Source: Octopus sinensis (Eukaryota). Taken from it: a stretch of DNA of 64,000 nt. Location of the stretch: the NCBI RefSeq assembly GCF_006345805.1, contig NC_043007.1, positions 38,998,001 to 39,062,000 on the forward strand, read 5' to 3'. Of this stretch, positions 7,056-64,000 are shown piece by piece. The position numbers and the translations under genes are program-made. Position 1 is the stretch's first letter. Every line of letters begins with the position of its first letter. Below the pieces are notes generated by a model. That model saw nothing but the letters and a program-made list of their open reading frames with translations. It ran no database searches and had not been told where the DNA came from.

Positions 7056-7374
<319 letters not shown>

Positions 7375-7513: not shown

Positions 7514-8206
7514 CTGGATTTAAACATGTATTGGTCATTTTATTAAGGTTTACTTGTATGCATGCATGCATGCTTACATACACACACACACACATATATT
7601 TATAAATGTATATATAAATATATGCATACATAAAAGCACACACACATACATACATATATACATACATACATACATTCATACATACATATATACATACATA
7701 CATACACACACACACACAACATACATACATACATACATACATACATACATACATACATACATACATACATACATACACACACACACATGAATATATATAT
7801 CTGTATGTGCAGGGTGGGACACATTTCACTGGTTGACAAATGCTTTAACAACAAACACACAATTTATAATGGTCAAACCACAATGGTAACTAATAAAACG
7901 GTAAAATATCTACATGGAGACTCCATTACCATCTAACTAACCTTACTAATGCCACATTAATGAGTATGTAAAATGTGGGAGGTTTTTCTGTTGCACTTTC
8001 TCTCTCTATGTATGTGTGTCTGCATGTGTGATATATGTATATATGGGAAATACTGCAAGAGACAGTAAAATAATTACAATTCATAAGGCCACAGACAGCC
8101 AACTGCACCTATCATATGTATCATATTCCACCTTTCCAAAGTCTTTGAGAGAGAGTCATATGCAGAAAGAGAATAGTGTAGAAAAAAAGATGCTCTTTTT
8201 TTAACA

Positions 8207-8630
8207 ATGGTGGACTTTGCAGATGATATAGCAATCATAGCTGATAAGATAGATCAAGCACAGCAGTTGCTCAGAAGAGTAGAAACCTCAGCTGTCAAAA
8301 TTGGACAAATACAAATGTCAAGAAAACTGAACACACATCTTTCAACCGATCAAGGGATGCTGAACTTTTTACTCTGAGCAGTTACAAATTTGATGTTGTT
8401 GAAAACTTCAAGTACTTAGATGGATGAGTGAACAGTTTGGAAGCAGACATTAAGATCAGGAAGGTACAAGCATGGACAGCCTGTCACAAACGAAAGGTCT
8501 GGAACTCCAAACTGCCAAGGTGAAGCAAAATCAAGCTGTACATTGCAACTGTCAAATAAGCGCTATTATATGGCAGTGAAACATGGACAATGATAAAGAA
8601 ATTATCAAATGGGCTTCATGGCTGCTATGC
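8207..8630 (+). pseudogene. Decayed RTE-clade LINE reverse transcriptase fragment
   Basis: Reads DFADDIAIIADKIDQAQQLLRRVETSAVKIG, VVENFKYL, LLYGSETWTM across frameshifts. Confidence 0.8.
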
Positions 8631-15070: not shown

Positions 15071-15916
15071 AGTGCACATATGTTTATTTACATACTCACA
15101 TATATTTGTGTGTGAATGTGTGTGTATCTTTCATTTTTTTATCTTTTACTTGCTTCAGTCGTTAGACCGTGGCCATACTGGGGCACTGCCTTGAAGAATT
15201 TTTTAGTCGATTGTATCACCTCCTGTACTTTTATTTTTATAGCCTGGTACTTATACTACCAGTCTCCTTTACCGAACCTCTAAGTTATGAGGACATAAAT
15301 ACACCAGCACCAGTTGTCAGGCAGTGGTAAGGGGACAACCACAGACAGAAACACACACAGACACACACACACGCACACACACACACACACATATATGACA
15401 GGTTTCTTTCAGTTTCAGTCTACCTAATTCACTCACAAGGCTTTGTCAGCCTGGGGCTATAGTAGAAGACACTTGCTCAAGGTGCCACTCATTGGGACTG
15501 AACCCAGGACCATGTGATTGGGAGGCAAGTTTCTCACCACACAGCCACACCTAATAATGCACTGCATACAATTCTGGATAATTTGAAAAGCAATATAAAG
15601 TCTACAATTGTTGATAACTTTAACTTCATCTAAGTATCATTTATTTAAAATATTCCTTCTATAGCATCTCTTTATCACCTTGTGTCTGTCCTCTTTTATG
15701 TATGTTAGAAATCTTCTTTGACTAATGCTTAGTACATTAGTGAGGAGACATAGCTATGACGTAGATGATGACGATCATAGTGAAGAGGATGATGTTGATG
15801 ATGATGACGATGATAGTTGTGATGATGATTTGGGCAATAATGATAATAATGATGATGATAAAGATTATGGTGGTGGTGGTGGTGGTGATATCGATGACAG
15901 GCACAATGATGACAAT

Positions 15917-16544
15917 GGTTCCCAATAAGGCTGCTTTTTGCAAGACATCAATTTTGCATTGGATTTCCAGTTGCCTTAAGAAGTCTTGAAGTTTTAATGG
16001 GATTGAACCCAATGCTCCAATCACCACTGGTGTCACTTTTACATTACCCTCTCGCATTCCGTACAGTTTTGCCATTTCCACTTTCAATTCAGAGTACTTG
16101 GCGATTTTTTCAACCTCTTTACTCACAATATTCATATAATTTGGTATGGCTACATCAATGATCTGACATCATTTGTCTCTCTTATTCAATATGACAATAT
16201 CCGGCCGATGGTGTTCAATTACATGATCCGTCTGAAATCATAGTCCCAGAGTATCGTTACTTTTCCATCCTCCTGCATAACTTTATTTGGTACATGATCA
16301 TACCAGTTCTCTGTAATTTTATATTGGTATCTATGGTATAAGAGCCAAAGAAGTTACATACACACTTTATCGTGGTGGCACTTGTATTCTTTTTGAGTAA
16401 GGCTCTCACATCCACTTACTAAGTGGATCATATTTCCCATGCTCTTGCCACAGAGTCTGTATTTCTGGTGTCAGAAGTTTTATAGATGTTATACTTCACT
16501 AACTTGGTAGCGAGAGCCTGGTCTTGTGCAGCAAAGATCAGGCT
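15917..16544 (-). pseudogene. R4/Dong-like RLE non-LTR retrotransposon fragment
   Basis: SLIFAAQDQAL, KYRLCGKS..HLVSGC..EYKCHHD (CCHC), ILWD, HRPDIV (PD-D/E nuclease), VIGALG, LQKAALLGT. Flanked by trinucleotide microsatellites. Confidence 0.88.
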
Positions 16545-19600: not shown

Positions 19601-19922
19601 CCTCTCTGTGGGTAGTAAAGAAATAGGTACTTTGTCTGTCTTTACATTCTGAGTTCAAATTCCACTGAGATCGACTTTGCCTTTCATTCTTTTGTGGGGG
19701 ATGGGGGGTGGGGTCAATAAATTAAGTACCAGTTGTGTACTGGAGTCGATCTAATCGACTAGCCCTCACCCTCAAAATTTTGGACCTTGTGCCTGGAGGA
19801 GAAAAGGTTATTGTCTGGATTCTCACAGTTCTGCAGGTAAAAGGGTAAAGGTAACAACCTCCTTTGGTCATGAATGACCATGGGATTGCATCTAGAGATC
19901 ATAGGATTGCACCATAGTCCAC

Positions 19923-20110
19923 ATTGCAAGAATTTGGACTATGAGGAGAGTGTCTGTCATCCCAGTAGTTGTAGGCGTACTTGGAGCACTGACAATCAAG
20001 TTCGAGAAATATGACAGAGGAATTGGAACTGACATGGGAGCAGAGCAAGCCCACCCAAAACTGCTCTGCTTGGGACACCTAGGATTTTGAGGCTGGTACT
20101 TGGATGTTGA
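19923..20110 (+). pseudogene. Second RLE LINE ORF C-terminus
   Basis: IARIWTMRRVSVIPVVVGVLGAL...KTALLGTPRILRLVLGC* with a frameshift. Confidence 0.75.
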
Positions 20111-21034: not shown

Positions 21035-23888
21035 CTGTAAATAGAGGTAAAGAATAGAAGAAAATCAATCATAAGACATCTGTGATTGAGGCAAAAAAAC
21101 CCCGAAAACCCACAGACAAACAAAAATACAAGTATGACTAGAAAAACCATGTAACTGTAATCTTTTGTAATTATCTTTTGCTATAACCGTTGGTCCATTG
21201 GTGGATTTTTCCAATCATGTCTTATATTATATAGATACAAGGGGAGACTGAAAGATATATACAGAGAATTAACATTAGAGGTACTAAATAAGTGCACATA
21301 CTTGGCTTGGTGACAGGCAATGAGTAAAAAAAAACATTTATCAATTAATTAATTAATGGAACTGTTACCTCCTCAATCATTCTTGTTAGACCATAAAACC
21401 TATTCATTATTTGTCTGATTACTATTATATTCTGTGATTAATGTACCAACCTAACAATTGGTGAATGAAAACAGTATACCATTTTTAAGTGGTGTCGACA
21501 TAAAAGCAAACATGAGAATGAATACACACAGACATACACACAATATATATATATTTTTTTCTTTTATTTATTTTTTTCTTTTATTTGTTTCAGTCATTTG
21601 ACTGCAGCCATGCTGGAGCACCACCTTTAGTCGAGCAAATCGACCCCAGGACTTACTCTTTGTAAGCCTAGTACTTATTCTATCGGTCTCTCTTGCCAAA
21701 CCGCTAAGTGATGGAGACGTAAACACACCAGCATCGGTTGTCAAGTGATGTTGGGGTGACAAACACAGACACACAAACATACACACACAAACACACACAC
21801 ACATATTTATATATGACAGGCTTCTTTCAGTTTCCGTCTAACAAATCCACTCACAAGGCTTTGGTCAGCCCAAGGCTATAGTAGAAGACACTTGCCCAAG
21901 GTGCCACGCAGTGGGACTGAACCTGGAACCATGTGGCTGGTAAGCAAGCTACTTACCACACAGCCACTCCTGCGCCTATATATATATACATATATACATA
22001 TAAATATATTGATATATATTGATATAAATATATATATTGATATATCACAGCACGCTAACATAAACCTCACCCGCATGACTTTATCCTTTACAGAAAGAAA
22101 ATAGACCAATGAGCAGAGCTATATATACCTACAACCCCAGAACAAAATTATATATATGACACTGCTACACACACCACATACACCTCATCCCCACAAGAGC
22201 ACCACATTAATAATACACACTTTCCCACTTCAAAATAACTCATGTCGGCTTCACACCATACCCTAGTTGTCTCTTGAGGTCTCTGGGTGAGATTTGGAGC
22301 CAACTTGTACAAATGTAAAGCAAAAGTCAAACATAAAATAATAATAATAATGATAATAAAATAATAATAATAATAATAATAACAACAACAACAACAATGT
22401 GATGGACCCTTCAGTCAATGATGACATACGAGCATTCAGCTTTTGCTAAACGACCTGCACAAATGATTTGTTTATAGTGATCAAATGTTTGTGCTGTGCA
22501 TTATCTCTCTCTCTCCATCAAATTGACATTGTCTGAACAGGTGCACAGTGCCCCACATGTCAGATATCAAAGTGATTGCAGGGCAATGTGAGATGAAGAG
22601 TTTTGCTCAAGAATACAACACACCACACAGTCTTAGGAACTGAAATTATGATTGTTAGGTCGTGAGTGCAACACCTTAACCACTAAGCCATAATAATAAT
22701 GATTTAAAATTTTGGCACAATTCGGGGAGAGGGGTTAAGTTGTTTAAATCAACCCCAGTACTCAACTGGCACTTATTTAATTGACCCCAAAAGAATGAAA
22801 GGCAAAAGTGACCACAGTGGAATTTGAACTCATAACATAAAGAAGGACAAAATGCTGCAATGTATTTTGTATGGCGTGCTAATGATTCTGTCAGTTCATC
22901 ACCTTAATAATAGTAATAATCCTATCTACTACAGGCCAAGGAATAAAATTTGTGGGGAGAGGGCGAGTTGATTACATCCACCCCAATTTGTTCCTTCTCG
23001 AGCCACACCTGGCTCATAAGGGCCAGTTTCCCGGTTTCCATGGCATATAGGTTCCCCACTGGACGAAATGCCGGTCCGTCACAGGTGAGCTGTTAGATGA
23101 GGGAGGAAAGAGTGAGAGAAAGTTGTGGCGAAAGAGTCAGCAAAAGTTCGCCATTACCTTCTGCTGGAGCCGCATGGAGCTTAGGCATTTCACTCATAAA
23201 CACACACATTGCCCGGACTGAGATTCGAACCCGTGATCCCTCGACCATGAATCCACTGCTCTAACCACTAGGCCATGTGTCTCCTAAAAATGCGCCTTTT
23301 TAAAGCCTAGCCAGGCTCATCTACCCCAGTGTGCAACTGGTACCTATTTCATCAATCTTGAAAAGATGAAAAGCAAAGTTCAACCTTGGCAGAATTTGAA
23401 CTCAGAACATGAGAATGAATGAAATGCCGCTAAGCATGTTGTCCGGCATGCTAGTGATTCTGCCAGCTCACCGCCTTAGCTAAAAGACACATTATTGGAC
23501 ATATACATAAGTAACACTATGCACACACATACACACACACACACAAGTATATACGCATACATGCACATGCAGACAATAGACTGCTGCACTTCTGGGCCAA
23601 TCAATGGTAGTCCAAGCAATAGATCAATATAAGAGAATAAAACATACTTCTAGGTTATACACACAGTTCTGCTTTCCAAACTGGAACAGCTATCTCACAC
23701 TCAATACACCATAACCCCCCCACCCCACCCAAACACCCCCACCCCCACCACCACCATCATACACACTTATATATGTTTTGTTAAAATTGTATCCACCATA
23801 TTTTTATACAAGATGTTGACACTCATTAAGAGTTTGACTACTGTGTTCTAAGTGACTTTGTTATGATCCAATGAACAGATAAACCTGG

Positions 23889-25469: not shown

Positions 25470-25522
<53 letters not shown>

Positions 25523-25734
25523 TATATATATACATACATATATATATATACATACATATATATATATATATATATATTCTTTGTCCAATCTTCTCTAATT
25601 TATAGACATATATATATAAATATATCTTATTTTTTTTATATATGATTTGGTTTATGTCTATCATTGTTGGAATTGCATAATAGTGGCTTTTCTCTAATTT
25701 ATATATTATATATATATATTATATATATATATAT

Positions 25735-25767
<33 letters not shown>

Positions 25768-25813
25768 GTATATATATATATATATTATGTATATATATAT
25801 ATATGTGTGTGTG

Positions 25814-25844
<31 letters not shown>

Positions 25845-26470
25845 ATATATATATATATATGTATGTATGTATGTATGTATATATATGTGTATATATATAT
25901 ATACATATACATATATACATATATATATGTGTGTATATGTATATATATATATATATGTGTATGTATGTATATATATGTGTATATATATATATACATATAC
26001 ATATGTATACATATATATATACATATATATATATATATACATATATATGTACATATATATACATATATATACATATCTTGGTGTTAAACTGATGGTATTA
26101 TTAAATTAATATCTCATTTTTTACCCTCATTTATGAGTGTATATATACATATATATACATATATATACCACATATATATACACATATATATAACATATTA
26201 TACATATATACACATATATATATACATATATATACACATATATATATACATATATAACATATATATACATATATATAATATATATATATATTATATATAT
26301 ATATTATATATATATAATATATATATATAATATATATATATATATACTATACATATATATATACATATACATATATATTACATATACATATATATATACA
26401 TATATATATACATATACATATATATATAGATATATATATATAATATATATATGTATATATGTATATATAT
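25467..26470. repeat. ~1 kb compound (TA)n/(TACA)n microsatellite with small inserts
   Basis: Directly visible. Source of the YI/IY ORF artefacts. Confidence 0.95.
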
Positions 26471-26854
26471 ACATGCATACATGTATATAATAGGGATGAC
26501 CACTAAGTGGACATCCAATATGCTAGAAGAAGATCACCTACAATCTAACTACAAAGAAAAGAATGTTCTCTAGAAAAATTCAGCAAACACCAGAACATAG
26601 ATGTATATTGATATTTCAGTTATTGATATTTTGCTCAGGCATTGCGATGCTAATAAACTGGTGTTAGAACTCAATACACATATGCTTCAGTATGAAGTGT
26701 CAGTCAAGTACAAAACAGTTATAAGAAATTGGGATGACAACGGAGTAAATAATCATGTTATGAACTTCATTAGCTTGCAGCTGTTTCTGCTAAAAGATGC
26801 AATGCACTCATAGTTGAATGCTTGAGTATCTATAGCTTCATCAGAGCTTCAAAC

Positions 26855-30950: not shown

Positions 30951-31323
30951 GAGAAAAAATGATTGCGGCCAAATTGGAAAAAGTTATCATGGACAGATAA
31001 GCAAGATTCAACAGGAATGAAAATAAAATTATAAAATAATTATAAAAATTATAAAATCATAAACAAACTAAAAAATGTATTCAATTTTAATACATATTAC
31101 TCTTTTACTTGTTTCTGTCATTTGACTGTGACCATGCTGGAGCACCGCCTTTAGTCGAGCAAATTGACCCCAAGACTTATTTTTTTCTAAGCCCAGTACT
31201 TATTCTATCGGTCTCTTTTGCCAAACCGCTAAGTTACGGGGATGTAAACACACCAGTATCGGTTGTCAGGCGATGTTGGGGGGACAAACACACACACAAA
31301 CATATATACACACACACATATAT

Positions 31324-31363
<40 letters not shown>

Positions 31364-31895
31364 TACAATGGGCTTCTTTCAGTTTCTGTCTACCAAATCC
31401 AATCACAAGGCTTTGGTCGGCCTGAGGCTATAGTAGAAGACACTTGCCCAAGGTACCATGCAGTGGGACTGAACTCAGGACCAAGTGGTTGGTAAGCAAG
31501 CTATTTACCACACAGCCACTCCTGTGCCTATTAAACATAATAGACACAAATATAAAAGTAAGTTTTTTAAAAAATTGTCTGATTTCACAGAAATAGATAA
31601 TCTTGAGACATCCTGTATATTGTAGTTTTTCTCAGCCTGCTACTGTATCGGGTACAAGTTTGGTTGCATGAAACATTTAGTTGTGGTTGGGGTGTCTTAT
31701 AAACCTGTTTGCCTTACATATGACACACAGGACACCCGCAAACACTTAGAATAACTTACACGCAAACAGAATAATTTACACACACAAACACTTAAAATAA
31801 CAGAATCTACAGACATCTTATAACAAAGGTGTAATAAGCACTTATATATAATTATACCATAAAACAAATAAAAACAATATAATACACATACATAC

Positions 31896-32650: not shown

Positions 32651-33840
32651 TTTCATTGTTGTTAGAGAATAACAGACCGAATTACAAACAATTTTGTTCA
32701 GGTTAACAAATGCACAAAAGAAATGTTTGTGCTTAGCTTGGAATTTCAGGTGGTTTTCTTAATATGCAGATATGGCTGTGTGAATAAGGGGGTTGGCATT
32801 ACAACCACGTTTTTCAAGTTCAGTTCTATGGTACCCCCACTTTGAGCAAGTTGTCTTCTGTGAATGACTACCCCAAGCTGATTAATGTCTAATGAGTAAA
32901 ATTTGGTAGATGGAAACTTCAAAATCTGTTGTCACAGTTGTGGCTGTGTGGTAAGAAGTTTGTTTCCCAACCAAGTGGTGTCACATTGAACAAGTGTCTT
33001 CTTCTATATCTCAAGCCAGCCAAAGCCTTGTGAATGGATTTGGTCGATGGAAACTGAAAGAACCCCCATTGTGTGTGTATGTGCGTGTGTGTGTTTGTCC
33101 CTCACTGCTTAACAACTGATGCTGCTTTGTTTATATCCTTGTAACTTAGTGGTTCAGCAAAAGAGACTGGCAGAATAAGTACCAGACTTCAAAAAACAAG
33201 TACTGGGGTTGATTTGTTCAAGTAAACCTTCCAAGAAAGTGCCCCAACTTGTCCTTAGTCCAATGACTGAAACAATTAAAAGATAAAAGACAGGGCAACT
33301 ACTGGGATGATTTTTGTCTACTTCTGATATCTCTTTTACTCTTTTTACTTGTTTCAGTCATTTGACTGCGGCCATGCTGGAGCACCACCTTTAATCGAGC
33401 AAATCAACCCCAAGATTTAATCTTTGGAAGCCTAGTACTCATTCTATCAGTCTCTTTTACCAAACCGCTAAGTTACAGGGATGTAAACACACCAGCATCG
33501 GTTGTCAAGTGATGTTGGGAGGACAAACACAGACACACAAACATATACACACACAAACATATATATATATATATATAGCAATTAAGGACAACTACTTAAT
33601 AAGGAAAACTTAACAAGAAATTGTCAGGTAGATAGCGTGAAAACCTCATAAGAGAAAAAATTTCGAAAATAATTATTTCTTATTGAACATATTAATTTAT
33701 ATATAGAGGGCATTATACATACATGCCAGAAGGCATTATACATACATGCCACACGCTAAGAGGGACAATTAGTCATTTCTACCAAAAATATTACTAATCC
33801 CACCGAATGCAATTTTTCAAAGTAAGACATTTAAAAATAT

Positions 33841-33888
33841 AGACCTGTATCACAGTGGTTTCATACTTACGTATTCATCAGCAGGCCT
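33841..33888 (-). ncRNA. Hammerhead copy with a stem III mismatch
   Basis: Same fold but GAAA CCAC U GUGA, giving a C-A mismatch. A fourth copy at 34320-34361(-) lacks most of the 5' strand of stem I. Confidence 0.75.
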
Positions 33889-34515
33889 GAATGTATTATA
33901 AATAAACAACGACCCTGCCCCGCTTAAGCCGATCAGCTAACTGATCAACATCAACGAAGCACATGGGTGAGTTTACATATATTACATCCGGATAAATGGC
34001 AAACTTTTACGAATTGCATTTCGGGAGAGGAAAAGTTTTTTCGGAATAAAAATTTAGCAATTAAGGACAACTACTTAATAAGGAAAACTTAACAAGAAAT
34101 TGTCAGGTAGATAGTGTGAAAACCTCATAAGAGAAAAAATTTCGAAAATAATTATTTCTTATTGAACATATTAATTTATATATAGAGGGCATTATACATA
34201 CATGCCAGAAGGCATTATACATACATGCCACACGCTAAGAGGGACAATTAGTCATTTCTACCAAAAATATTACTAATCCCACCGAATGCAATTTTTCAAA
34301 GTAAGACATTTAAAAATATAGACCTGTATCACAGTGATTTCATACTTACGTATTCATCAGCGAAAAAACTTTTCCTCTCCCGAAATGCAATTCGTAAAAG
34401 TTTGCCATTTATCCGGATGTAATATATGTAAACTCACCCATGTGCTTCGTTGATGTTGATCAGTTAGCTGATCGGCTTAAGCGGGGCAGGGTCGTTGTTT
34501 ATTTATAATACATTC

Positions 34516-34563
34516 AGGCCTGCTGATGAATACGTAAGTATGAAATCACTGTGATACAGGTCT
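34516..34563 (+). ncRNA. Type I hammerhead ribozyme, intact
   Basis: AGGCCUG CUGAUGA AUAC-GUAA-GUAU GAAA UCAC-U-GUGA UA CAGGUCU. 7-bp stem I, predicted cleavage after A34556. Confidence 0.88.
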
Positions 34564-34988
34564 ATATTTTTAAATGTCTTACTTTGAAAATTGCATTCGG
34601 TGGGATTAGTAATATTTTTGGTAGAAATGACTAATTGTCCCTCTTAGCGTGTGGCATGTATGTATAATGCCTTCTGGCATGTATGTATAATGCCCTCTAT
34701 ATATAAATTAATATGTTCAATAAGAAATAATTATTTTCGAAATTTTTCTCTTATGAGGTTTTCACGCTATCTACCTGACAATTTCTTGTTAAGTTTTCCT
34801 TATTAAGTAGTTGTCCTTAATTGCTAATTTTTATTCCGAAAAAACTTTTCCTCTCCCGAAATGCAATTCGTAAAAGTTTGCCATTTATCCGGATGTATAT
34901 ATGTAAACTCACCCATGTGCTTGTTGATGTTGATCAGTTAGCTGATCGGCTTAAGCGGGGCAGGGTCGTTGTTTATTTATAATACATC

Positions 34989-35036
34989 AGGCCTGCTGAT
35001 GAATACGTAAGTATGAAATCACTGTGATACAGGTCT
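34989..35036 (+). ncRNA. Type I hammerhead ribozyme, second intact copy
   Basis: Identical to 34516-34563, predicted cleavage after A35029. Confidence 0.88.
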
Positions 35037-35180
35037 ATATTTTTAAATGTCTTACTTTGAAAATTGCATTCGGTGGGATTAGTAATATTTTTGGTAGAAA
35101 TGACTAATTGTCCCTCTTAGCGTGTGGCATGTATGTATAATGCCTTCTGGCATGTATGTATAATGCCCTCTATATATAAT

Positions 35181-35232
<52 letters not shown>

Positions 35233-37105
35233 TATGACGGGCTTCTTTCAGTTTCCGTCTACCAAATCCACTCACAAGGCTTTGGTCAGCCCAAGGCTAT
35301 AGTGGAAGACTCTTGCCCAAGGTGCCACGCAGTGGGAATGAACCTTGAACCATGTGGCTGGTAAGCAAGCTACTTACCACACAGTCACTCCTGTCCCTAT
35401 TCTGTTTTTAAATAGAACATGTTCATAAGATATGTTAACTCTGGATAAAAACTACAGTAGATCTGCCTTGCACTGATGTGTTTACATTAATTGATATATA
35501 TCATCTTCGTCGTTGTCATTATCATCATCATCATTTAACAACCATTTTCCATGCAGACATGGGTTAGACATTTCGACCGGAACTGCTAAGCCAGAGAGCT
35601 GCACCAGGTTTCAGTCTGATTTGGCATGGCTTCTACAGCTGGATGCCCTTCCTAACACCAACCATTCCAAAAGTTTCAAATTTTTGGCCCAAGCTAAGTA
35701 ATTTCAAAGGAGTGGGTAAGTTGATTATATTGATCCCAGTGCTCAACTGGTATTATTTATTTTATTGAACCCAGAAGGATGACAGGCAAAGTGGACTCAG
35801 CGGGATTTGAACTCAGAATGTAAAGACAGATGAAATGCTACTAAGCATTTTGCCTGGTGCGGTAACAATTTCGCCAGCTTGCTGCCTTTACATTAATTAT
35901 GATATATTGATGATTATTTTTAATTTATTATTACTTCTCTCCCCACCTGAGCTAGTCATGTTTTCCCCTCTAATGCAAGGCTCCGTTTTCTGTCCCTCAA
36001 CATTACTCCCCTACTTAGTTGAGGGGGTCTTGCCTTGGGAGTTATTTGGTGACCTCACTAGGGCTTGTGCCACATAAAAAGCATCCAGGAGGCACTGTAA
36101 AGAAGTTGACATCAAACTATAGAAACCATGCTAAAGCAAGGCTTGGTGTAGTCTTCTGACTTGCCAATTACTGTCAATCCATCCAACCCATGCCAGCATG
36201 GAAAAACAAACGTTAAAGTATGATCACCTGTTGTTTATGATAGATCATCATCATCCAGCCTAGTGGTTATTCACGATACCAGTGAATATTTTCTTACATA
36301 CTGGAGGTGACAAATCTTATTTAAGCAAGTGGCTGGGTGTAAGTACATACCATCGATAAACCTCATCGAAAGTGAAATGCATTTAGCATTCTTATTAACT
36401 GGTGCTGGAATAATTTTATTCTTCTGGTATATATATATATATATATATTGACTGGGCCTGATGAAGCCTTCCAGCTTTACAGACCCCAGTTGAACCGTCC
36501 AACCCATGCTAGCATAGAAAACGGACGCTAATTGATGATGATGATGATTGAGCTTTTAAATACAGCACATCCATAAGGTAGATGAATATTGCAGTAAATT
36601 TGCCTTCCAATGATGACACATAGATCACTGTAACAATATCTGTTAGGCAGCTAGCTGATTATGGGGTGACCAGACATGTTTTTGTGGAATATTGGACATC
36701 AACAGCACTGCTTGTATGACAATGAAACACATAAGTACCAAGTTATGTCAAGACAAGGACACAGGCATGCATGCATCCACACACATATACACACATGCAC
36801 GTACACATGTGTGTAGACAATGGCCTTCTTTCAATTTCCATCTATCAAATCCACTCATGAAGCACTGCTTGGCCCAGGGTAATTAAGACACTTGCCCAAG
36901 GTGCCACACAGTACGATTGAACCTGAAGCAATGTGGTTGGGAAGCAAATTTCTTAACCAAACAGCTATGTGAGCACTTGATATATATATGTTTATATATA
37001 CATACATATATACATATATATAAATATACACACATATATATATATATATATGTGTGTGTGTGTTTGTGTATATATATATATATATACACACACACACATG
37101 CATAC

Positions 37106-38602: not shown

Positions 38603-39274
38603 TAGAAAGAATAGCTATAACTCTTTGACTGCTATTTCTAAATTCGGTGTGTGGTGAGGCAATTTGTTGCTAAACCCTTAATTGCTTAGTATTACTTAAA
38701 TTTTCCTCGAATGAGGCTTTTACATGCCGAAATCTACTTGGTGTAATTAATAATTATTCCAAATTAATTAATTTCACCCTTTATTGTTACTGATAACCAT
38801 ATTTTATCCCAGTAAATGACCACAGCATCTTGTCTTGGCTACACGCGGGTGGAAAGGGGCTGGTGACACAAACTTTCATTCACACTTTGAATTTCGTGGT
38901 ACTGGTAATGCTTTGGCTCGCTCTGACACTGAGTTGAGATGATGCCTTCTAGTATCTCAAAATTTAATATACAATTATTCATAATTGTAGTATCCTACGC
39001 TGATGAGAAAAGAAGTTTGGGTAAGGTAGAATTATCTAATTCTTATGCTTTCCTAAAACTTGATTTCGAAACGTACGTCCGTAGGTGACTTAAAATTGTA
39101 TGATAGATTGCCGTCATTTCATTCTCTCTTACCTGTCTGTGTTTGCCATTCAAGTGCTGTATTTTTACTGAGATCCCCCTTTTAGTAGAAAGAATAGCTA
39201 TAACTCTTTGACTGCTATTTCTAAATTCGGTGTGTGGTGTGGCAATTCGTTGCTAAACCCTTAATTGCTTAGTA

Positions 39275-39275
<1 letters not shown>
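38603..39275 (+). mobile_element. 583-bp-period element with 90-bp direct repeats and a hammerhead
   Basis: 38603-38692 and 39186-39275 differ by 2 substitutions. The right end runs into (TA)n. Confidence 0.8.
38994..39085 (+). ncRNA. Type I hammerhead with long stem II
   Basis: CCUACG CUGAUGA G..60 nt..C GAAA CGUACG UC CGUAGG. 6-bp stem I, palindromic stem III, GUC cleavage after C39079. Confidence 0.85.
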
Positions 39276-39324
<49 letters not shown>

Positions 39325-39491
39325 TGTAAAAGTAAAAAAATATACAAACTGGGACAAGAACGTGAAACATTTAGAAGACGACACAAAAAACACGGACGGG
39401 ACATTCGAAGCCCTCAATCATCAGTCAAGAACCGGATCATCTTCGCAATTTCGGCTGATTAATCTTGAGATTGCTCCGATCTGGGCAGCCC

Positions 39492-39553
<62 letters not shown>

Positions 39554-40780: not shown

Positions 40781-41400
40781 CAACCTGAACCACTACAATA
40801 TAAGACTGTCATTTTGCTTCTCATTCGGATTCCCTGATATTTTCGCATGATTGTACCCTAAATCTCTCCACAAAACTGGATTATGAACTATAAGGACATA
40901 CACAAATTTTGTAAGTTCAAGACTTTTTCATCGGATCTCCAAAAAATCGAACTTATCTGCGATTCTTGTAAATTTCAATAACAATCTGTTCCTCTACACG
41001 ATATGACAGTCACTATGCTTTTACTCAGACTTTCCTCTACATGATATGGCAGTCACTTTGCCTCTTACTCGGATTTTCAGAAATTTTGCATGACTGTATC
41101 CGAAAATTTCTTCATACAACTTGATCAAATATTCAATATGAGCTATATGTAGACATGCATAAATTCTATAGGTTTAAAACCTTTCATCGGATCTCCATGA
41201 ATCGAACTTTCTTCAATGCAGTTAATCTTACAACCTCTTTTGTATCTACCCCTTTTGATGTTTGGGAATTCTCTGATATTTTTTCGGCTGACGAGTAAGA
41301 GCCATCTGTATTCACTGCATTTTTTGTAGCTTATTAAAGATGTCCTCGTACGAAACGATCGTACCGAGATTTTAATCCATTCTTGTTGCTTTTTTCCTAT
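40780..41400 (+). mobile_element. ~620 bp (TA)n-embedded element with internal duplications and a hammerhead
   Basis: Flanked by (TA)n on both sides. TTCATCGGATCTCCA..AATCGAACTT is duplicated at ~40928 and ~41184. Confidence 0.7.
41282..41369 (+). ncRNA. Type I hammerhead with long stem II
   Basis: UUUCGG CUGACGA GUA..UAC GAAA CGAUCG UA CCGAGA. Palindromic stem III, GUA cleavage after A41363. Confidence 0.83.
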
Positions 41401-42183
41401 TTATATATATATATATATATTATATATGTTTTTTTTTCATCATCATCATCATCATCATCGTTTAGCGTCCGTTTTCCATGCTAGCATGGGTTGGACGGTT
41501 CTACTGGGGTCTGTGAAGCCAGAAGGCTTCATCAGGCCCAGTCAAATCTGGCAGTGTTTCTACGGCTGGATGCCCTTCCTAACGCCAACCACTCCGTGAG
41601 TGTAGTAGGTGCTTTTTACGTGCCACCCGCACAGGTGCCAGACAGAGCTGGCAAACGGCCACGAACGGATGGTGCTTTTTATGTGCCACCGGCACAAGGG
41701 CCAGGCGAGGCTGGCAACGGACACGAAACGGGGCGGTGCTGGCAACGGTCGCGAAACGGAAGGTTCTCTTACATGCCACCGGCACTGGTAACACATCTGC
41801 AATTTCCATTGATCGATTTCCATTCTGATCCTCACTTGCCTCAACGGGTCTTCACAAGTAGAGTTTCGACATGCCACCGGCACTGGTAACACATCTGCAA
41901 TTTCCATTGATCGATTTCCATTTCTGATCCTCACTTGCCTCAACGGGTCTTCACAAGTAGAGTATCGACATGCTTTATTCTTTTATTTGTTTCAGTCATT
42001 TGACTGCGGACATGTTGGAGCACTGCCTTTAGTCAAGCAAACTGACACGAGGATTTATTCTTTGTAAGCCTAGTAATTATTCTATCAGTCTCTTTTGCTG
42101 AACTGCTAAGTTACGGGGACATAAACACACCAGCATCAGTTGTCAAGCGATGCTGGAGGGACAAACACAGACACACAAACATA

Positions 42184-43106: not shown

Positions 43107-43292
43107 ATAATAATATATAAATTAATATGTTCAATAAGAAATAATTATTTTCGAAATATATAATATATATATATTATATATATATATATATATAGTTAAT
43201 CCAAACGTGAAAGTACAAAAAAACACAACAACGCGAGGACGTGGAAAAAATATAGTATTATTGGACGCTCAGGAAAGAAGGAAAGAAGGAGA

Positions 43293-43327
43293 GTTTAACG
43301 TTTCGAGCGGAGCTCTTCGTCAGAAAC
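43293..43327 (-). ncRNA. Minimal type I hammerhead in a (TA)n-flanked ~200 bp element
   Basis: GUUU CUGACGA A GAGC-UCC-GCUC GAAA CG UU AAAC, with a loopless ACGU stem III. A decayed relative lies at 25160-25195(+). Confidence 0.7.
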
Positions 43328-43655
43328 ATAGGAGAAGGAAAGATCCAGAGGAGGGAAGGCAGAGGCAAAAAAATCGCCACCCACTTCAGTCATGAATGAG
43401 CATGGGATTGTTCAGGAACAAAACACAGAGCCTGGTCCAGGAGTTGAACTCACTACTTCATGGTTGTGAGCCCAATGGTGAAACCACTGAACCATGCACC
43501 TTCACATATATGTGTGTGTGTATGTGTGCGCACATGCGTGTGTTTACATCTGTGTTTGTGTGCCCACCACCACTTGACAACCAGTGCTGGTGTGTTTATG
43601 CCTCCAGAACTTAGCGGTTTGGCAAAAGAGACTGCTAAGTACTAGGCTTTACAAA

Positions 43656-43702
<47 letters not shown>

Positions 43703-44861
43703 GTATTGGGATTGATTTGTTCAACTAAAATGCTTCAAGGCAGTGCCCCAGCATGGCCACAATCTAATGAATAAATCATGTAAAAGATAAGACAAAAGAT
43801 AACTAAATCAACATAGGTGTACCTGATATGGGAGAGAGCTTCTGTTTGGTTATTTGATCTGCTAGAAATCACAGCCAACTCTCTTAAAATAAACACTATG
43901 ACCTTCCTGGCACTTTGTCAGTTTTGATGACTAGTTTTCCAGCTGATCTAATCTATGGAATAGCCTGCCCATGAAATTAAAGTGCTAGTGGCTGAGCACT
44001 CCACAAATATTATATACATTTAGGATAGTTCACAGGGAGATTCCGCATGACACAAAATGGGACAAGACTGTCCCTTTGAAATACAGGCACAACTCATATT
44101 TGCCAGCTGAGTGGACAGGAGCAACATGAAATAAAATATCTTACTGAAGGACATAATTCGCCGCCAGGAATTGAACTCATGACCTTATTGTGAGCCGAAT
44201 GCCCCAAGCCACTAAGCCACATACCTTCATACTATCTTTGTGGTAAGTAGCTTGTTTACCAACCACATGGTTCCGGGTTCAGTCCCACTGTGTGGCACCT
44301 TGGGCAAGTGTCTTCTACTATAGCCTCGGGCCGACCAAAGCCTTGTGAGTGGATTTGGTAGACGGAAACTGAAAGAAGCCCATCGTATATATGTATATAT
44401 ATATATGTGTGTGCGTGTATGTTTGTGTGTCTGTGTTTGTCCCATCCAACATCGCTTGACAACTGATGCTGGTGTGTTTATGTCCCCGTCACTTAGCAGT
44501 TCGGCAAAAGAGACCGATAGAATAAGTACTAGGCTTACAAAGAATAAGTCCCGGGGTCGAGTTGCTCGATTAAAGGTGGTGCTCCAGCATGGCCACAGTC
44601 AACTGACTGAAACAAGTAAAAAAGAGAAAGAGAAATCATTCATGCAGTTGTTCCTTTCATTTAACATCTGCTTCCCATGGGAATTTTTTTACAACTGGAT
44701 GTACTTACTGTCACTAATCCTTAACCTGCCTTTTCAAGAAAGGGATTTTTTTTTTATTCCAGAGGGATTTAAAAGTACAGATACAATTGGAAAATGATTA
44801 TATTGACAGCAAACTTCACTGGTTGCAGTCCAGTCATAAATGATATCACCATCTGCATCTG

Positions 44862-57776: not shown

Positions 57777-58190
57777 AGGCGGTGCGCTGGCAGAAACGTT
57801 AGCATGCCAGGCGAAATGCTTAGCGGTATTTCGTCTGCGGTTATGTTCTGAGTTCAAATTCTGCCGAGGTCGACTTTGCCTTTCATCCTTTCGGGGTCGA
57901 TAAATTAAGTACCAGTTACGCACTGGGGTTGATGTAATTGACTTAATACCTATGCCTGTCTTTGTTTGTCCCCTCTATGTTTAGCCCCTTGTGGGTAATA
58001 AAGAAATAGGTATTTCGTCTGCGGTTATGTTCTGAGTTCAAATTCTGCCGAGGTCGACTTTGCCTTTCATCCTTTTGGAGTTGATAAATTAAGTACCAGT
58101 TATACACTGGGGTCATTGTAATTGACTTAATCCCTTTGTCTTTCCTTGTTTGTCCCCTCTATGTTTAGCCCCTTGTGGGCAATAAAGAAA
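57777..58190 (+). mobile_element. SINE family B, partially dimeric copy
   Basis: Head GGCGGTGCGCTGGCAGAAACG, B-box GAGTTCAAATTC, conserved core GCCTTTCATCCTTTCGGGGTCGATAAATTAAGTACCAG, tail GTCCCCTCTATGTTTAGCCCCTTGTGGGTAATAAAGAAAT, body repeated from ~58010. Other copies at ~391-590, 1535-1740, 19408-19810, 53215-53445, 54920-55105(-). Confidence 0.88.
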
Positions 58191-58220
58191 TGAATATGAT
58201 ACACATATTGGATGACTCAC

Positions 58221-61695: not shown

Positions 61696-64000
61696 GATGA
61701 GAATTTGACCAGAGAGGAAAGTATTTGTCTCTAATCCTTTCAGACCGAGCAGTGCATTGTGTTCTTGTGCAAAACACTTTATTTGATATTGCTCCAGTCT
61801 ACTCAGTTGTAAATGGATAACCCTGTGACAGAATAGTCCTTTGATCAGGGGTGATATTGGCCAGCTCACCTGACCAATGGAGAGGCATCATTTGAAGGCT
61901 AGAACAATGCAAAGTGCATTGTGACTAGTGATGTATAACAACATCCTATTGTCTGATCAATAGTGCGATACTGTGATATATATATATTCTTTTATTCTTT
62001 TACTTGTTACATTCATTTGACTGTGGCCATGCTGGAGCACCACCTTGAAGGATTTTTTTAGTTGAAGAAACCGACTCCAGGACTTAGTCTCTGTAAGCCT
62101 AGTACTTATTCTATCAGTCTTTTTTGCTGAACTGCTAAGTTACAGGGAAGTAAACACACCAATACTGGTTGTCAAGCAATGGTGGTGGTGGTGGTGGGAA
62201 CAAACACAGGCACAAAGGCACACACACATAAATATATACATACGATGATGATGATGATACACATACACACACATATATATATATATATATACAATGGGCT
62301 TCTTTCAGTTTCCATCTACCAAATCCACTCACAAGGCTTCGGTAAGTCTGAGGCTATAGTAAAAGACACTTGACCAAGGTGCCATACAGTGAGACTGAAC
62401 CTGGAACTATGTTGTTGGAAAGCAGACTTCTTACCACACAGCCATGCCTACACCTATAAAATAAATTTTTTTATCAGAGGTTTGTTTTTCATGGCATTAT
62501 GGAGGTCCTTTAAAAACTCACATTCAGATACAACACACGGCTATATCGTATCCAGGTCTACAACATCTAATGCATCTTCTGACCCTTCCAACAAATCTAG
62601 GTGTTTTTTTTTTCTTTGCTCTTAAGATGATCAAGGTGTAATTTGAGACTGACTTGCCTGCTATTTCTAGCAATCCTACAAAAGACATCCTGTTTGCACA
62701 GCCAGGATTTGTATAAAATAAACATGGCATTGATTACACTAAATTAAATGATGTTTGTTTACTTCCCTCTTCACTCTCTGTGATTGCAATAATCAAATCA
62801 TAAACCCGAAGATTTTCTTTGAAATAATGAATAAGATCATGGGATGTGGTACGGGGTGGGAAGGAACAATGTCAACAGAAATATAGGGCTTGTGAAAATA
62901 ATTTGGGTCAAAGATTTGCTGACTTTGTAATGTTAAGTGCTTGACCTAAGTAAATGTTTCTCTCAATAAATTAGAGGGCTTAATGTCCATCTATTTTGTT
63001 TCTTTGTTTTCACTTTGCTGGGTCTTTTTTTTGTTGTTGTTTCTTTTCTATGCCAATATGTATATTTGGCTGGTAGTCTGTCTCTTAGTGTATGTGTGAG
63101 TGAATACACATCTATCTTTCTCTTTGAGTATGTGTGTGAATACACCTATCTGTTCATCCAGCCCTCCATTGATATAAATGTGTGTGTGTGTGTGCGTGTG
63201 CATGCATGTGTATGTGTGCATATGTGAGTGTGAATGTGTGTGTGTATGTCTGTCCCTCCAGCCATCAATACACACACACACATACATACATACATGCATG
63301 CATGCATACATACATACATACTTACATAGGAAGCACTGTCGGTTACGACGACGACGGGTCCCAGCTGATACGATCAACGGAACAGCTTGCTCGTGAAATT
63401 AACGTGTAAGTAGCTGAACACTCCACAGACACATGTACCCCTAACGTAGTTCTTAGGGAGATTCAGTGTGACACAGTGTGTGACAAGGCTGGCCCTTTTG
63501 AAATACAGGTACTACTCATTTTTGCCAGCTCAGTGGATTGGAGCAACGTCAAATAAAGTGTCTTGCTCAAGGACACGTGTCACCGGGAATTGAACTCACA
63601 ACCTTACAATCGTGAGCCAAATGCCCCTAACCACTAAGGCCTCTGTGGGCCTTAATCTAGTCCTGCTCAGGTGGGCAGGTATCAAAAGGGTTAAAGCAAC
63701 CTTCTTCAACACTTTGAATTTCTCTCTCTCTCTCCACATTTAATGACAATCGGTATGGCTTTTGTAAAATCAGATCTGTTGCAGACTTACTCTTCTACAT
63801 TACTCTTCTGTGAGTTGTCACCCAGAAGAAATATGCTGAAAGCAGAGTTGTTGCAACCTGCAACATTTTTAAGTGTAATGGCAATTCCACCAGACCATGG
63901 GTCATTTGTTATCCTTCAGACTTCACTTATAAATTTACATAGTCTGTCATGAGTCCTAGGACTTATAAGGCCAAAGCTTAATCCAGTTACTATAGCATAT

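What the first reader, a model, noticed from the sequence alone, without database searches (positions are those of the whole stretch)
33578..35180. Head-to-head array of a ~478 bp hammerhead-ribozyme monomer inserted in a SINE's (TA)n
Seen: about 1.6 monomers on the minus strand (33578-34361) are joined 5'-to-5' to about 1.7 monomers on the plus strand (34362-35180). Each monomer carries a type I hammerhead, AGGCCUG-CUGAUGA-AUAC/GUAU-GAAA-UCAC U GUGA-UA-CAGGUCU, and the inversion breakpoint falls within stem I of one copy. A fragment of the monomer recurs at 43114-43157, again in (TA)n, so the family is dispersed. Known: tandem hammerhead satellites and retrozymes (newt satellite 2, schistosome Sm-alpha, Dolichopoda pDo500) are processed to monomer or circular RNAs, and Penelope-like elements carry minimal hammerheads and leave inverted 5' junctions. 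Inference: a young non-autonomous retrozyme-like element mobilised by a Penelope-like RT. I know of no description of it in octopus.
Basis: partly seen in the sequence, partly recalled or inferred. Interest (0 to 1): 0.92.

Follow-up and report, generated by a model that had tools for sequence, protein, structure and literature searches.

The report
Inverted hammerhead retrozyme insertion in SINE
A young 1.6-kb insertion of ~479-base repeat units, each carrying a hammerhead self-cleaving RNA motif, sits in the TA-repeat of an older SINE; it looks like a new family of the known 'retrozyme' class of RNA-copied parasitic elements, not a new kind of system.

Summary
33578-34361 (minus strand, 1.64 units) and 34362-35180 (plus strand, 1.7 units) are 98-100% identical copies of a 473-479-nt unit, joined 5'-to-5'. 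They sit inside the internal (CA)n(TA)n tract of a ~460-bp SINE.

Each unit carries a complete type I hammerhead core. My descriptor expects 0.01 hits per shuffled window. The unit RNA is strongly structured on the hammerhead strand (z -7.5).

Two caveats apply. Rfam's Hammerhead_1 model does not detect the motif, and it has A10.1-U11.1 where G-C is highly conserved. As a monomer it prefers an inactive fold, but two copies are predicted to form the double hammerhead.

New finding: in unit coordinates the two arms are adjacent pieces of one template (…270 | 285…, 11-14 nt missing). That is the geometry of twin priming, not a fold-back palindrome.

Three more hammerhead-bearing elements lie within 10 kb, all abutting (TA)n. 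Two of them match Rfam Hammerhead_1 below its threshold.

Best reading: a young non-LTR retrozyme-like element copied by target-primed reverse transcription, probably by a Penelope-like enzyme.

Self-cleavage, expression, copy number, stem covariation and the host species could not be tested.

It is a new member of a known kind, of moderate interest.

The parts
33330..33577 (-). Left flank: tail half of the host ~460-bp SINE (the SINE lies on the minus strand), ending in its internal (CA)n(TA)n
   Evidence: Joined flanks align end to end with six other SINE copies in the window
33559..33577 (.). (TA)n tract abutting the 3' end of the minus arm
33578..34361 (-). Minus-strand arm, 1.64 units. 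In unit positions (1 = first nt after the predicted cleavage site): 445-479, 1-479, 1-270(272)
33841..33888 (-). Complete hammerhead copy with U15.2->C (G33858 on +), which breaks one helix III pair
   Evidence: missed by the descriptor for that reason
34320..34361 (-). Hammerhead copy truncated by the inversion junction. It keeps G2.1 and the core but lacks 6 of 7 nt of the 5' strand of helix I
34361..34362 (.). 5'-to-5' inversion junction with 1 nt of microhomology (C34361). The arms are out of phase, so this is not a true palindrome
34362..35180 (+). Plus-strand arm, 1.7 units. Unit positions 284/285-479, one full unit (473 nt here), 1-150
34516..34563 (+). Type I hammerhead motif: helix I 7 bp, CUGAUGA, helix II AUAC/GUAU with GUAA loop, GAAA, helix III AUCA/UGAU with CUG loop, H17 = A. 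Predicted cut after A34556
34989..35036 (+). Second identical hammerhead motif; predicted cut after A35029
35179..35236 (.). (TA)n tract abutting the 3' end of the plus arm. The arm ends inside the unit's own TATATATA (unit positions 143-150)
35181..35410 (-). Right flank: head half of the same host SINE
43113..43157 (+). 45-nt fragment, 100% identical to unit positions ~143-188, embedded in the TA-rich microsatellite of another SINE copy
38603..39275 (+). Context: element A, a second hammerhead-bearing family. 583-nt unit, 1.15 copies, 3' end in (TA)n. Hammerhead at 38994-39085 with palindromic helix III ACGUACGU
   Evidence: Rfam RF00163 23.1 bits, E 0.0011, below gathering 34
40781..41404 (+). 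Context: element B, 624 nt, between two (TA)n tracts. Hammerhead at 41282-41369 near its 3' end
   Evidence: (Rfam RF00163 19.5 bits, E 0.016)
43293..43327 (-). Context: candidate minimal PLE-type hammerhead (helix I 4 bp, bulged A after A9, G10.1-C11.1, palindromic ACGU). Its element ends at the (TA)n next to the 45-nt fragment
   Evidence: 0 hits in 200 shuffles; not found by Rfam

Best explanation
The block is one recent retrotransposition event of a non-coding, hammerhead-bearing tandem-unit element (unit ~479 nt, 33% G+C). It behaves like a metazoan non-LTR retrozyme, that is, a non-autonomous relative of Penelope-like elements.

Proposed steps, all inferred unless marked shown:
1. A source array is transcribed into a multimeric RNA that folds into a compact, highly paired structure. 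Structure is shown by prediction only.
2. The hammerheads have a weak helix III and are expected to cut mainly when two neighbouring copies pair into a double hammerhead. This would give unit-length RNA that could be circularised.
3. An uncleaved, more-than-unit RNA of at least 3.4 units was used as template at a nicked (TA)n target.
4. One target 3' end annealed to the unit's own UAUAUAUA (unit 143-150) and was extended back to unit position 285. This made the plus arm.
5. The other target end annealed about 13 nt upstream on the same RNA, at ...CCUUAAUUGC(UA), unit 270-272. It was extended for 1.64 units, making the minus arm.
6. The two cDNA 5' ends were joined with 1 nt of microhomology.

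This is the twin-priming variant of target-primed reverse transcription. It gives the 5'-to-5' junction, both 3' ends facing the flanks, and arms that are adjacent in template coordinates (all shown in the sequence).

The enzyme is most likely a Penelope-like RT/GIY-YIG endonuclease, which is reported to prefer (TA)n and to leave partial tandems with an inverted 5'-truncated copy. This is inferred; no such ORF is in the window.
For: - Anatomy and near-identity of the copies.
- Insertion into an older SINE with the empty site reconstructed. SINE copies are only 75-84% alike while the arms are 98-100% alike, so the insertion is much younger than its host.
- Full hammerhead core with all three helices in type I topology: 0.01 expected per shuffled window and 0 in 200 shuffles with the palindromic-helix-III descriptor.
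- Unit RNA structure: MFE -133.2 kcal/mol, z -7.5 on the hammerhead strand, against -99.2, z -3.7 on the other strand. As a circle, z -5.8 against -4.5, with 18 against 9 G-U pairs; two control stretches give z about 0.
- Two hammerhead copies cofold into stems I and II plus an extended intermolecular helix III at -31.1 kcal/mol, against 2 x -12.1 for monomers.
- Template coordinates: the minus arm ends at unit 270-272 at the flank, and the plus arm starts at unit 284/285 at the junction.
- Microhomology at all three junctions.
- TA targeting: four or more separate hammerhead-element insertions in this window abut (TA)n, which covers 3.35% of the window.
- Element A shares the 11-mer CCTTAATTGCT with this family, in both cases within 7 nt of a 3' junction with (TA)n.
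- Literature: features of non-LTR retrozymes (PMC7229834). PLE partial tandems, inverted 5'-truncated copies and (TA)n preference (PMC8557442). Retrozymes as PLE derivatives (10.64898/2026.07.22.740005). Twin priming (PMC2912911). Recently active PLE families in Octopus vulgaris (PMC13282606).
Against: - Rfam Hammerhead_1 and its clan do not match the motif at gathering or at E<=10, even on 91 nt. The same model does pick up the two neighbouring hammerheads.
- The 10.1-11.1 pair is A-U. It is described as the most conserved pair after 15.1-16.1 (PMC3088659) and as highly conserved G-C (PMC4209133).
- As a monomer the active fold is 2.4 kcal/mol worse than an alternative fold, and helix III pairs have about 3% probability.
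- One of the three complete copies carries a helix III mismatch.
- No covariation test is possible because the copies are nearly identical. No external copies could be reached.
- The adjacency of the arms in template coordinates has a chance probability of roughly 3-13%, depending on how the test is framed. It is suggestive, not proof.
- No target-site duplication can be read in a (TA)n target.
- No PLE ORF is present in the window.
- Units within one arm differ at a few sites. This speaks against rolling-circle copying of a single monomeric circle, but could also be sequencing error.
Confidence: 0.6

Rival explanations
1. The element is real and hammerhead-bearing, but the inversion arose at the DNA level after insertion. 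A direct 3.4-unit array was inserted or amplified, and its 5' part was later inverted in place. Alternatively the array grew by unequal crossing-over like a small satellite.
For: An in-place inversion with one breakpoint at the array/flank boundary and the other between unit positions 272 and 284 gives exactly the same sequence as twin priming. Retrozyme arrays are thought to expand locally (10.64898/2026.07.22.740005).
Against: It needs a breakpoint that coincides exactly with the insertion boundary, which twin priming gives for free. There are only 3.4 units, nested in a SINE, with 98-100% identity. PLE-type insertions are known to arrive already inverted.
Confidence: 0.12
2. The element is real, but the head-to-head join (and perhaps the six 1-nt deletions) is an assembly or chimeric long-read artefact.
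For: PLE-type tandem/inverted structures are known to cause assembly problems (PMC8557442). Five of the six differences in the 473-nt unit are homopolymer-length deletions, typical of long-read consensus errors.
Against: Fold-back or missed-adapter chimeras give true palindromes. Here the arms are out of phase (unit 445 joined to unit 284/285) and of unequal length. Both outer ends continue into the two halves of one SINE. The arms being adjacent in template coordinates is not expected from an artefact.
Confidence: 0.1
3. The unit is a retrotransposed non-autonomous repeat, but the hammerhead is an inactive relic. The mobiliser would be a microsatellite-specific LINE (for instance of the Dong/R4 group) rather than a Penelope-like element.
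For: A-U at 10.1-11.1, no Rfam match and a disfavoured monomer fold. Twin priming is documented for LINE-1, not for PLEs. Dong-R4 LINEs are the most numerous recently active LINE insertions reported in O. vulgaris (1129 insertions, PMC13282606). That Dong-type elements target microsatellites is my own recollection, not checked here. There is no PLE ORF in the window.
Against: All eleven invariant core positions, A15.1-U16.1 and H17 are intact in three copies, inside a unit whose structure is strand-specific. There is no fixed 3' tail of the kind LINE-dependent SINEs share with their partner; three different 3' ends are seen. Hammerhead motifs in animals are tied to PLEs and retrozymes in every study read. 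Neighbouring PLE-type hammerhead elements use the same (TA)n targets.
Confidence: 0.18
4. Two independent insertions of the same family landed in opposite orientations in the same (TA)n tract.
For: (TA)n tracts in this region are repeatedly hit.
Against: No TA repeat is left between the two 5' ends; they abut with 1 nt of microhomology. The first 195 nt of the plus arm are identical to the minus-arm version of the unit (pair I1). The arms are adjacent in template coordinates.
Confidence: 0.05

Closest known systems
Metazoan non-LTR retrozymes (Cervera & de la Pena 2020, PMC7229834; coral, mussel and axolotl families)
   Same: Type I hammerhead in every unit of a short tandem repeat. Low G+C (33%). 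No ORF, LTR, PBS or PPT. Unit RNA predicted to be highly self-paired. Weak helix III, so dimeric action is expected as in amphibian retrozymes. Occurs alongside PLE-type hammerheads.
   Different: The 473-479-nt unit is above the 170-400 nt originally reported, though inside the 51-972 bp range of the 2026 preprint. A10.1-U11.1 replaces G-C. It is not detected by Rfam Hammerhead_1. Only 3.4 units are present, split into two inverted arms. Expression and circles are untested. No cephalopod family is described in the papers I could search.
Penelope-like elements and their non-autonomous derivatives (PMC8557442, PMC4209133)
   Same: Partial tandem copies, an adjacent inverted 5'-truncated copy, insertion into (TA)n microsatellites, and hammerhead motifs in the repeated part.
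   Different: No RT/GIY-YIG ORF here, so it is not an autonomous PLE. Its hammerhead has a 4-bp helix III and a short helix II, unlike the minimal PLE motif (long helix II, bulge after A9, G10.1-C11.1) seen in the neighbouring elements at 38994, 41282 and 43293. No 30-40-bp 'tail' could be recognised.
Twin-priming (5'-inverted) LINE-1 insertions (described in PMC2912911)
   Same: The inverted upstream segment and the direct downstream segment are adjacent on one RNA template with a small loss (11-14 nt). Both 3' ends face the flanks. Microhomology is present at the flank junctions and at the inversion junction.
   Different: The template is a periodic multimer without poly(A). Priming uses TA microhomology with a microsatellite target. 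TSDs are unreadable. The enzyme is probably not L1 ORF2p.
Hammerhead satellites: newt satellite 2, Schistosoma Sm-alpha, Dolichopoda pDo500
   Same: Tandem units with a type I hammerhead that has a weak, near-palindromic helix III. Newt and avocado sunblotch viroid motifs act as double hammerheads (PMC6155905).
   Different: Those are long arrays or SINE-like dispersed units with canonical G10.1-C11.1 cores recognised by Rfam. This is a single small nested insertion with an atypical stem II closing pair.

Membership tests
Hammerhead ribozyme, type I (Rfam RF00163) | Invariant core C3 U4 G5 A6 N7 G8 A9 ... G12 A13 A14, with A15.1-U16.1 and H17 | tested here: met
   Exact in 34516-34563, 34989-35036 and 33841-33888; 0.01 descriptor hits expected per shuffled window
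Hammerhead ribozyme, type I (Rfam RF00163) | Three helices around the core, with helix I open (type I topology) | tested here: met
   Helix I 7 bp (one G-U), helix II 4 bp with a GUAA loop, helix III 4 bp with a CUG loop
Hammerhead ribozyme, type I (Rfam RF00163) | Highly conserved G10.1-C11.1 pair closing helix II | tested here: not met
   A10.1-U11.1 in all copies. Its conservation is stated in PMC4209133 and PMC3088659, which also shows that natural active exceptions (U-U) exist
Hammerhead ribozyme, type I (Rfam RF00163) | Covariance-model score at or above Rfam's gathering threshold (34 bits) | tested here: not met
   No hammerhead-clan hit at gathering or at E<=10 on 2 kb and on 91 nt. 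The model works in this window: 23.1 and 19.5 bits on the neighbouring hammerheads
Hammerhead ribozyme, type I (Rfam RF00163) | Compensatory changes in the helices across copies | tested here: inconclusive
   Only four nearly identical copies. The single helix change (U15.2->C) breaks a pair. No external copies were retrievable
Hammerhead ribozyme, type I (Rfam RF00163) | Site-specific self-cleavage giving 2',3'-cyclic phosphate and 5'-OH ends | not testable with these tools
   Needs in vitro transcription. Prediction only: the active fold is disfavoured in a monomer and favoured in a two-copy complex
Metazoan non-LTR retrozyme | Short head-to-tail repeat units (about 150-450 bp; 51-972 bp in the 2026 survey), each with a type I hammerhead | tested here: met
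   473-479-nt units, 1.64 and 1.7 units per arm, one motif per unit
Metazoan non-LTR retrozyme | Low G+C (<45-50%), non-coding, no LTR/PBS/PPT | tested here: met
   33% G+C. Longest open frame is 54 aa, and no protein in 5.8 billion matches any frame
Metazoan non-LTR retrozyme | Unit RNA highly self-paired | tested here: met
   z -7.5 linear and -5.8 circular, 66% of nt paired, stronger on the hammerhead strand
Metazoan non-LTR retrozyme | Expressed as unit-length linear and circular RNA | not testable with these tools
   No transcriptome access
Metazoan non-LTR retrozyme | Dispersed multi-copy family coexisting with autonomous PLEs | tested here: inconclusive
   Only one extra 45-nt fragment in 64 kb. 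PLE-type hammerheads are nearby but there is no RT ORF.
Autonomous Penelope-like element | Single ORF with a PLE-type RT and a GIY-YIG endonuclease | tested here: not met
   No ORF above 54 aa in the unit. No stop-free stretch of 60 aa or more in the window reads as a PLE RT by eye (not scanned with Pfam)
Twin-priming (5'-inverted) retrotransposition product | Inverted segment and direct segment adjacent on the template, with a small deletion or duplication, 3' ends at both flanks, and junction microhomology | tested here: met
   Unit 270-272 at the flank and unit 284/285 at the junction, an 11-14-nt gap, 1-nt microhomology at the junction and 2-8 nt at the flanks. Chance of such adjacency is about 3-13%
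Twin-priming (5'-inverted) retrotransposition product | Target-site duplication flanking the whole insertion | tested here: inconclusive
   The target is (TA)n on both sides. The joined (TA)n is about 40-50 nt longer than in other SINE copies, which may or may not reflect a duplication

The most novel reading that the evidence does not exclude
This is the first described cephalopod retrozyme family. It would carry a natural A10.1-U11.1 hammerhead variant that is active only as a double hammerhead. The locus would be a 'caught in the act' insertion showing that animal retrozymes integrate by twin-primed TPRT at (TA)n from a linear, uncleaved multimeric RNA rather than from a monomeric RNA circle. 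The motif CCUUAAUUGCU, shared with a second family, would act as a preferred initiation site for the partner (Penelope-like) reverse transcriptase.
Probability: 0.3. Interest if true: 0.55.

Novelty: new member of a known kind. Interest (0 to 1): 0.35.

Why it matters
How animal retrozymes and Penelope-like elements integrate is openly described as unknown (PMC8557442; 10.64898/2026.07.22.740005).

A very young insertion whose two arms map to adjacent stretches of one multimeric template gives a concrete, testable model. It has readable microhomologies at all three junctions and sits in a (TA)n target. The model is double priming on one RNA.

That model can be checked genome-wide by tabulating junction geometry for all copies.

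The A10.1-U11.1 core, if active, would add a natural variant at the most conserved helix-closing pair.

Practically, Rfam-based annotation misses this family entirely. Hammerhead counts in cephalopod genomes, such as the 235 Hammerhead_1 loci in giant squid, are therefore likely underestimates.

Tried and rejected
- **Rfam:** no hammerhead-clan hit on the whole window at gathering, on 33400-35400 or on 34495-34585 at E<=10. The only hits there were spurious miRNA and snoRNA matches to the TA repeat.
- **External copies by protein search:** I joined all stop-free frames of the unit into one pseudo-protein and searched 5.8 billion predicted proteins, hoping for spurious gene calls on cephalopod contigs. 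Nothing was found.
- **External copies by DNA pattern:** exact-pattern scans of metagenome contigs, GTDB genomes and IMG/VR gave 0 hits. These collections do not hold cephalopod genomes, so this says nothing about copy number.
- **Organism identification:** a TE-like ORF at 15740-16168 gave no hit. A degenerate LINE RT at about 8.2-8.6 kb gave only unnamed ENA metagenome proteins at 41-48% identity. The host stays unverified.
- **ARAGORN:** no tRNA in the window.
- **Fold-back, snap-back or missed-adapter palindrome:** rejected, because the arms are out of phase at the junction.
- **TIR DNA transposon or foldback element with a TA TSD:** rejected, because the two outer termini are not inverted copies of each other (GCAATTAAGG... 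against ...CCCTCTATATATA).
- **Helitron:** rejected. There are no 5'-TC/CTRR-3' ends, and three different 3' ends are seen.
- **Rolling-circle copying of one monomeric circle:** disfavoured, because units within an arm differ at 2-3 sites. It is not excluded if those differences are sequencing errors.
- **Element at 43196-43520 against the (TA)n-flanked insert at 39321-39497:** no significant similarity.
Full report
**What is there.** The region reads as described. A minus-strand arm (33578-34361, 784 nt) and a plus-strand arm (34362-35180, 819 nt) are made of the same unit. The unit is 479 nt in the minus arm and 473 nt in the full plus-arm copy. Copies are 98.3-100% identical. They differ by six single-base deletions in the plus-arm unit, five of them in homopolymer runs, and by two substitutions. 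The two arms meet 5'-to-5' at 34361/34362 with one shared base. This is not a true palindrome. The minus arm starts at G2.1 of a hammerhead motif, and the plus arm starts 155 nt upstream of the next motif. A 45-nt piece of the unit, 100% identical, lies at 43113-43157 inside TA-rich repeat.

**Host site.** When the flanks 33330-33577 and 35181-35410 are joined in a script, they align end to end with six other copies of a ~460-bp SINE in the window. The join falls in the (CA)n(TA)n tract that every copy carries. SINE copies are 75-84% alike, so the insertion is far younger than its host. No target-site duplication can be read in a TA repeat. The joined TA tract is some 40-50 nt longer than in other copies, which is only a hint.

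**The hammerhead motif.** The sequence is AGGCCUG-CUGAUGA-AUAC-GUAA-GUAU-GAA-AUCA-CUG-UGAU-A|CAGGUCU.
- It has every invariant core base, A15.1-U16.1, H17 = A and the three helices in type I order.
- The predicted cut falls after A34556 and A35029, and after the complements of T34327 and T33848 on the other arm.
- My descriptor finds the two plus-strand copies against 0.01 hits per dinucleotide-shuffled window. A second descriptor requiring a self-complementary helix III gave 0 hits in 200 shuffles.

Three things count against a simple 'it is a ribozyme':
- Rfam's hammerhead models do not match it at gathering or at E<=10, even on 91 nt.
- The pair closing helix II is A-U where G-C is called highly conserved (PMC4209133; PMC3088659).
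- In a single copy the active fold (-9.7 kcal/mol) loses to an alternative fold (-12.1), and helix III has about 3% pairing probability.

Two copies, however, cofold into exactly the double hammerhead: stems I and II of each plus a 10-bp intermolecular helix III with one U-U mismatch, at -31.1 kcal/mol. That is how newt, viroid and PLE hammerheads are reported to work. One of the three complete copies (33841-33888) has U15.2->C, which breaks a helix III pair.

**Unit RNA.** The 479-nt unit folds far better than shuffles on the hammerhead strand (-133.2 kcal/mol, z -7.5). The effect is much weaker on the other strand (-99.2, z -3.7). Folded as a circle, z is -5.8 against -4.5, with 18 against 9 G-U pairs, and two control stretches give z about 0. 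Strand-asymmetric, G-U-rich structure points to constraint on the RNA. It matches the 'highly self-paired' RNAs of retrozymes. The unit is 33% G+C and has no frame longer than 54 aa. No frame matches any protein.

**Architecture in template coordinates.** Number the unit from the first base after the cleavage site.
- The minus arm covers 445-479, 1-479 and 1-270(272).
- The plus arm covers 284/285-479, one full unit, and 1-150.
- The flank end of the inverted arm (270-272) and the junction end of the direct arm (284/285) are therefore neighbours on one template, with only (TA)AATTTTTATTC(C) missing.

This is the geometry of twin priming as described for 5'-inverted LINE-1 copies. One target end primes at the RNA's 3' part, the other primes internally on the same RNA, and the two cDNAs are joined at short microhomology (PMC2912911). 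Here the direct arm's 3' end lies in the unit's own UAUAUAUA, which can pair with a (TA)n target. The inverted arm's 3' end shares UA with the target. The inversion junction shares one base.

With a 479-nt period, such adjacency has a chance probability of about 3% (gap 0-14 nt, one labelling) to about 13% (within 15 nt either way, either labelling). I treat it as suggestive. An in-place inversion of a direct array would give the same sequence, but it needs a breakpoint exactly at the insertion boundary.

Neither arm begins at a cleavage site, and both read through intact sites. The template was therefore uncleaved, more-than-unit RNA. Units within an arm differ at 2-3 sites. This fits a heterogeneous multimeric transcript better than repeated passes round one monomeric circle, unless those differences are sequencing errors.

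**Context found on the way.** The same descriptors found three further hammerheads.
- **38994-39085 (+):** lies in a 583-nt unit present in 1.15 copies (38603-39275) that ends in (TA)n. Its RNA is also strand-specifically structured (z -4.9 against -1.6).
- **41282-41369 (+):** lies near the 3' end of a 624-nt element (40781-41404) that sits between two (TA)n tracts.
- **43293-43327 (-):** a minimal motif with the bulge after A9, G10.1-C11.1 and the palindromic ACGU described for PLEs. Its element ends at the (TA)n next to the 45-nt fragment.

Rfam Hammerhead_1 matches the first two at exactly these coordinates with 23.1 and 19.5 bits. Both are below the gathering score of 34 because of about 55-nt inserts in helix II.

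(TA)n tracts of at least 5 units cover 3.35% of the window. At least four independent hammerhead-element insertions abut them.

The 583-nt family and the 479-nt family share the 11-mer CCTTAATTGCT, in both cases within 7 nt of a 3' junction with (TA)n. This may mark a preferred initiation site, but that is inference.

**Comparison with what is known.**
- Non-LTR retrozymes are tandem, low-GC, non-coding units with type I hammerheads. They are expressed as circles in coral, mussel and axolotl and are said to occur from molluscs to arthropods (PMC7229834).
- PLE insertions are partial tandems, often with an inverted 5'-truncated copy. (TA)n is a preferred target for the Naiad clade, and non-autonomous derivatives give multicopy head-to-tail insertions (PMC8557442).
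- A 2026 preprint argues from Xenopus that retrozymes derive from PLE pLTRs. It states that invertebrates were not examined and that the mechanism is unknown.
- O. vulgaris is reported to have 31 recently active PLE families.
- The giant squid genome paper lists 235 Rfam Hammerhead_1 loci without analysis.
- I found no paper describing a retrozyme in a cephalopod. The library is incomplete, and I could not verify that this window is from an octopus.

**Verdict.** The motif is an atypical variant that standard annotation misses.

What I add:
- reconstruction of the empty site;
- the strand-specific RNA structure;
- the predicted double-hammerhead mode;
- the twin-priming-like template geometry;
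- three more hammerhead elements sharing the (TA)n target.

This is a new family of a known kind of element, of moderate interest. Its main value is as a clean, young insertion for working out how such elements integrate.

Noticed in passing
window 38603-39275 (+); hammerhead 38994-39085: Second hammerhead-bearing tandem element (583-nt unit, 1.15 copies), with its 3' end in (TA)n. Rfam Hammerhead_1 scores 23.1 bits (E 0.0011, below gathering). Helix III is the palindrome ACGUACGU and helix II carries a ~57-nt insert. The unit RNA is structured on the hammerhead strand only (z -4.9 against -1.6). It shares CCTTAATTGCT with the 479-nt family at the 3' junction.
   Followed up: yes
window 40781-41404 (+); hammerhead 41282-41369: Third hammerhead-bearing element, 624 nt, flanked by (TA)n on both sides. 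It is built of two ~245-nt subrepeats 71% alike. Rfam Hammerhead_1 scores 19.5 bits (E 0.016). The RNA is not notably structured.
   Followed up: partly
window 43293-43327 (-), element about 43196-43400: Candidate minimal PLE-type hammerhead (GUUU-CUGACGA-A-GAGC/GCUC-GAAACGU-U-AAAC). Its element ends at a (TA)n 38 nt from the 45-nt retrozyme fragment. Upstream on the same strand (about 43400-43490) lies SINE-like sequence, so this may be a hammerhead-carrying SINE-like element. Rfam and ARAGORN find nothing there.
   Followed up: partly
window 39321-39497: A 177-nt insert flanked by (TA)n on both sides, directly downstream of element A. It has no similarity to the other elements and no intact hammerhead (a CUGAUGA...GAAU look-alike on the minus strand). 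Identity unknown.
   Followed up: partly
window 34557-35029: All six differences of the 473-nt unit from the 479-nt version are 1-nt deletions, five of them in homopolymer runs. One (A5->A4 at unit position ~31) recurs in the next partial unit. They could be long-read consensus errors or real variants of the template.
   Followed up: partly
window, many sites (e.g. 614-1021, 2428-2856, 21579-21979, 31097-31532, 44236-44633, 61988-62457): At least 25 full or partial copies of one ~460-bp SINE with an internal (CA)n(TA)n tract, 70-87% alike. The internal microsatellite repeatedly hosts later insertions: the retrozyme array at 33578-35180, and the retrozyme fragment plus another element at about 43113-43500.
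   Followed up: partly
window about 8177-8600 (+); 15740-16168 (-); 19905-20087 (+): Degenerate retrotransposon ORF remnants. The first has an FADD reverse-transcriptase motif, and its nearest database relatives carry Pfam PF00078 (41-48% identity, unnamed metagenome proteins). None looks like a Penelope-type RT.
   Followed up: partly
window 25470-26489; 7056-7374; 57825-58191: A 1-kb imperfect (AT)n tract, a 319-nt (AAC)n tract and a 184-nt unit present twice (92% alike). These are ordinary repeats, not examined further.
   Followed up: no
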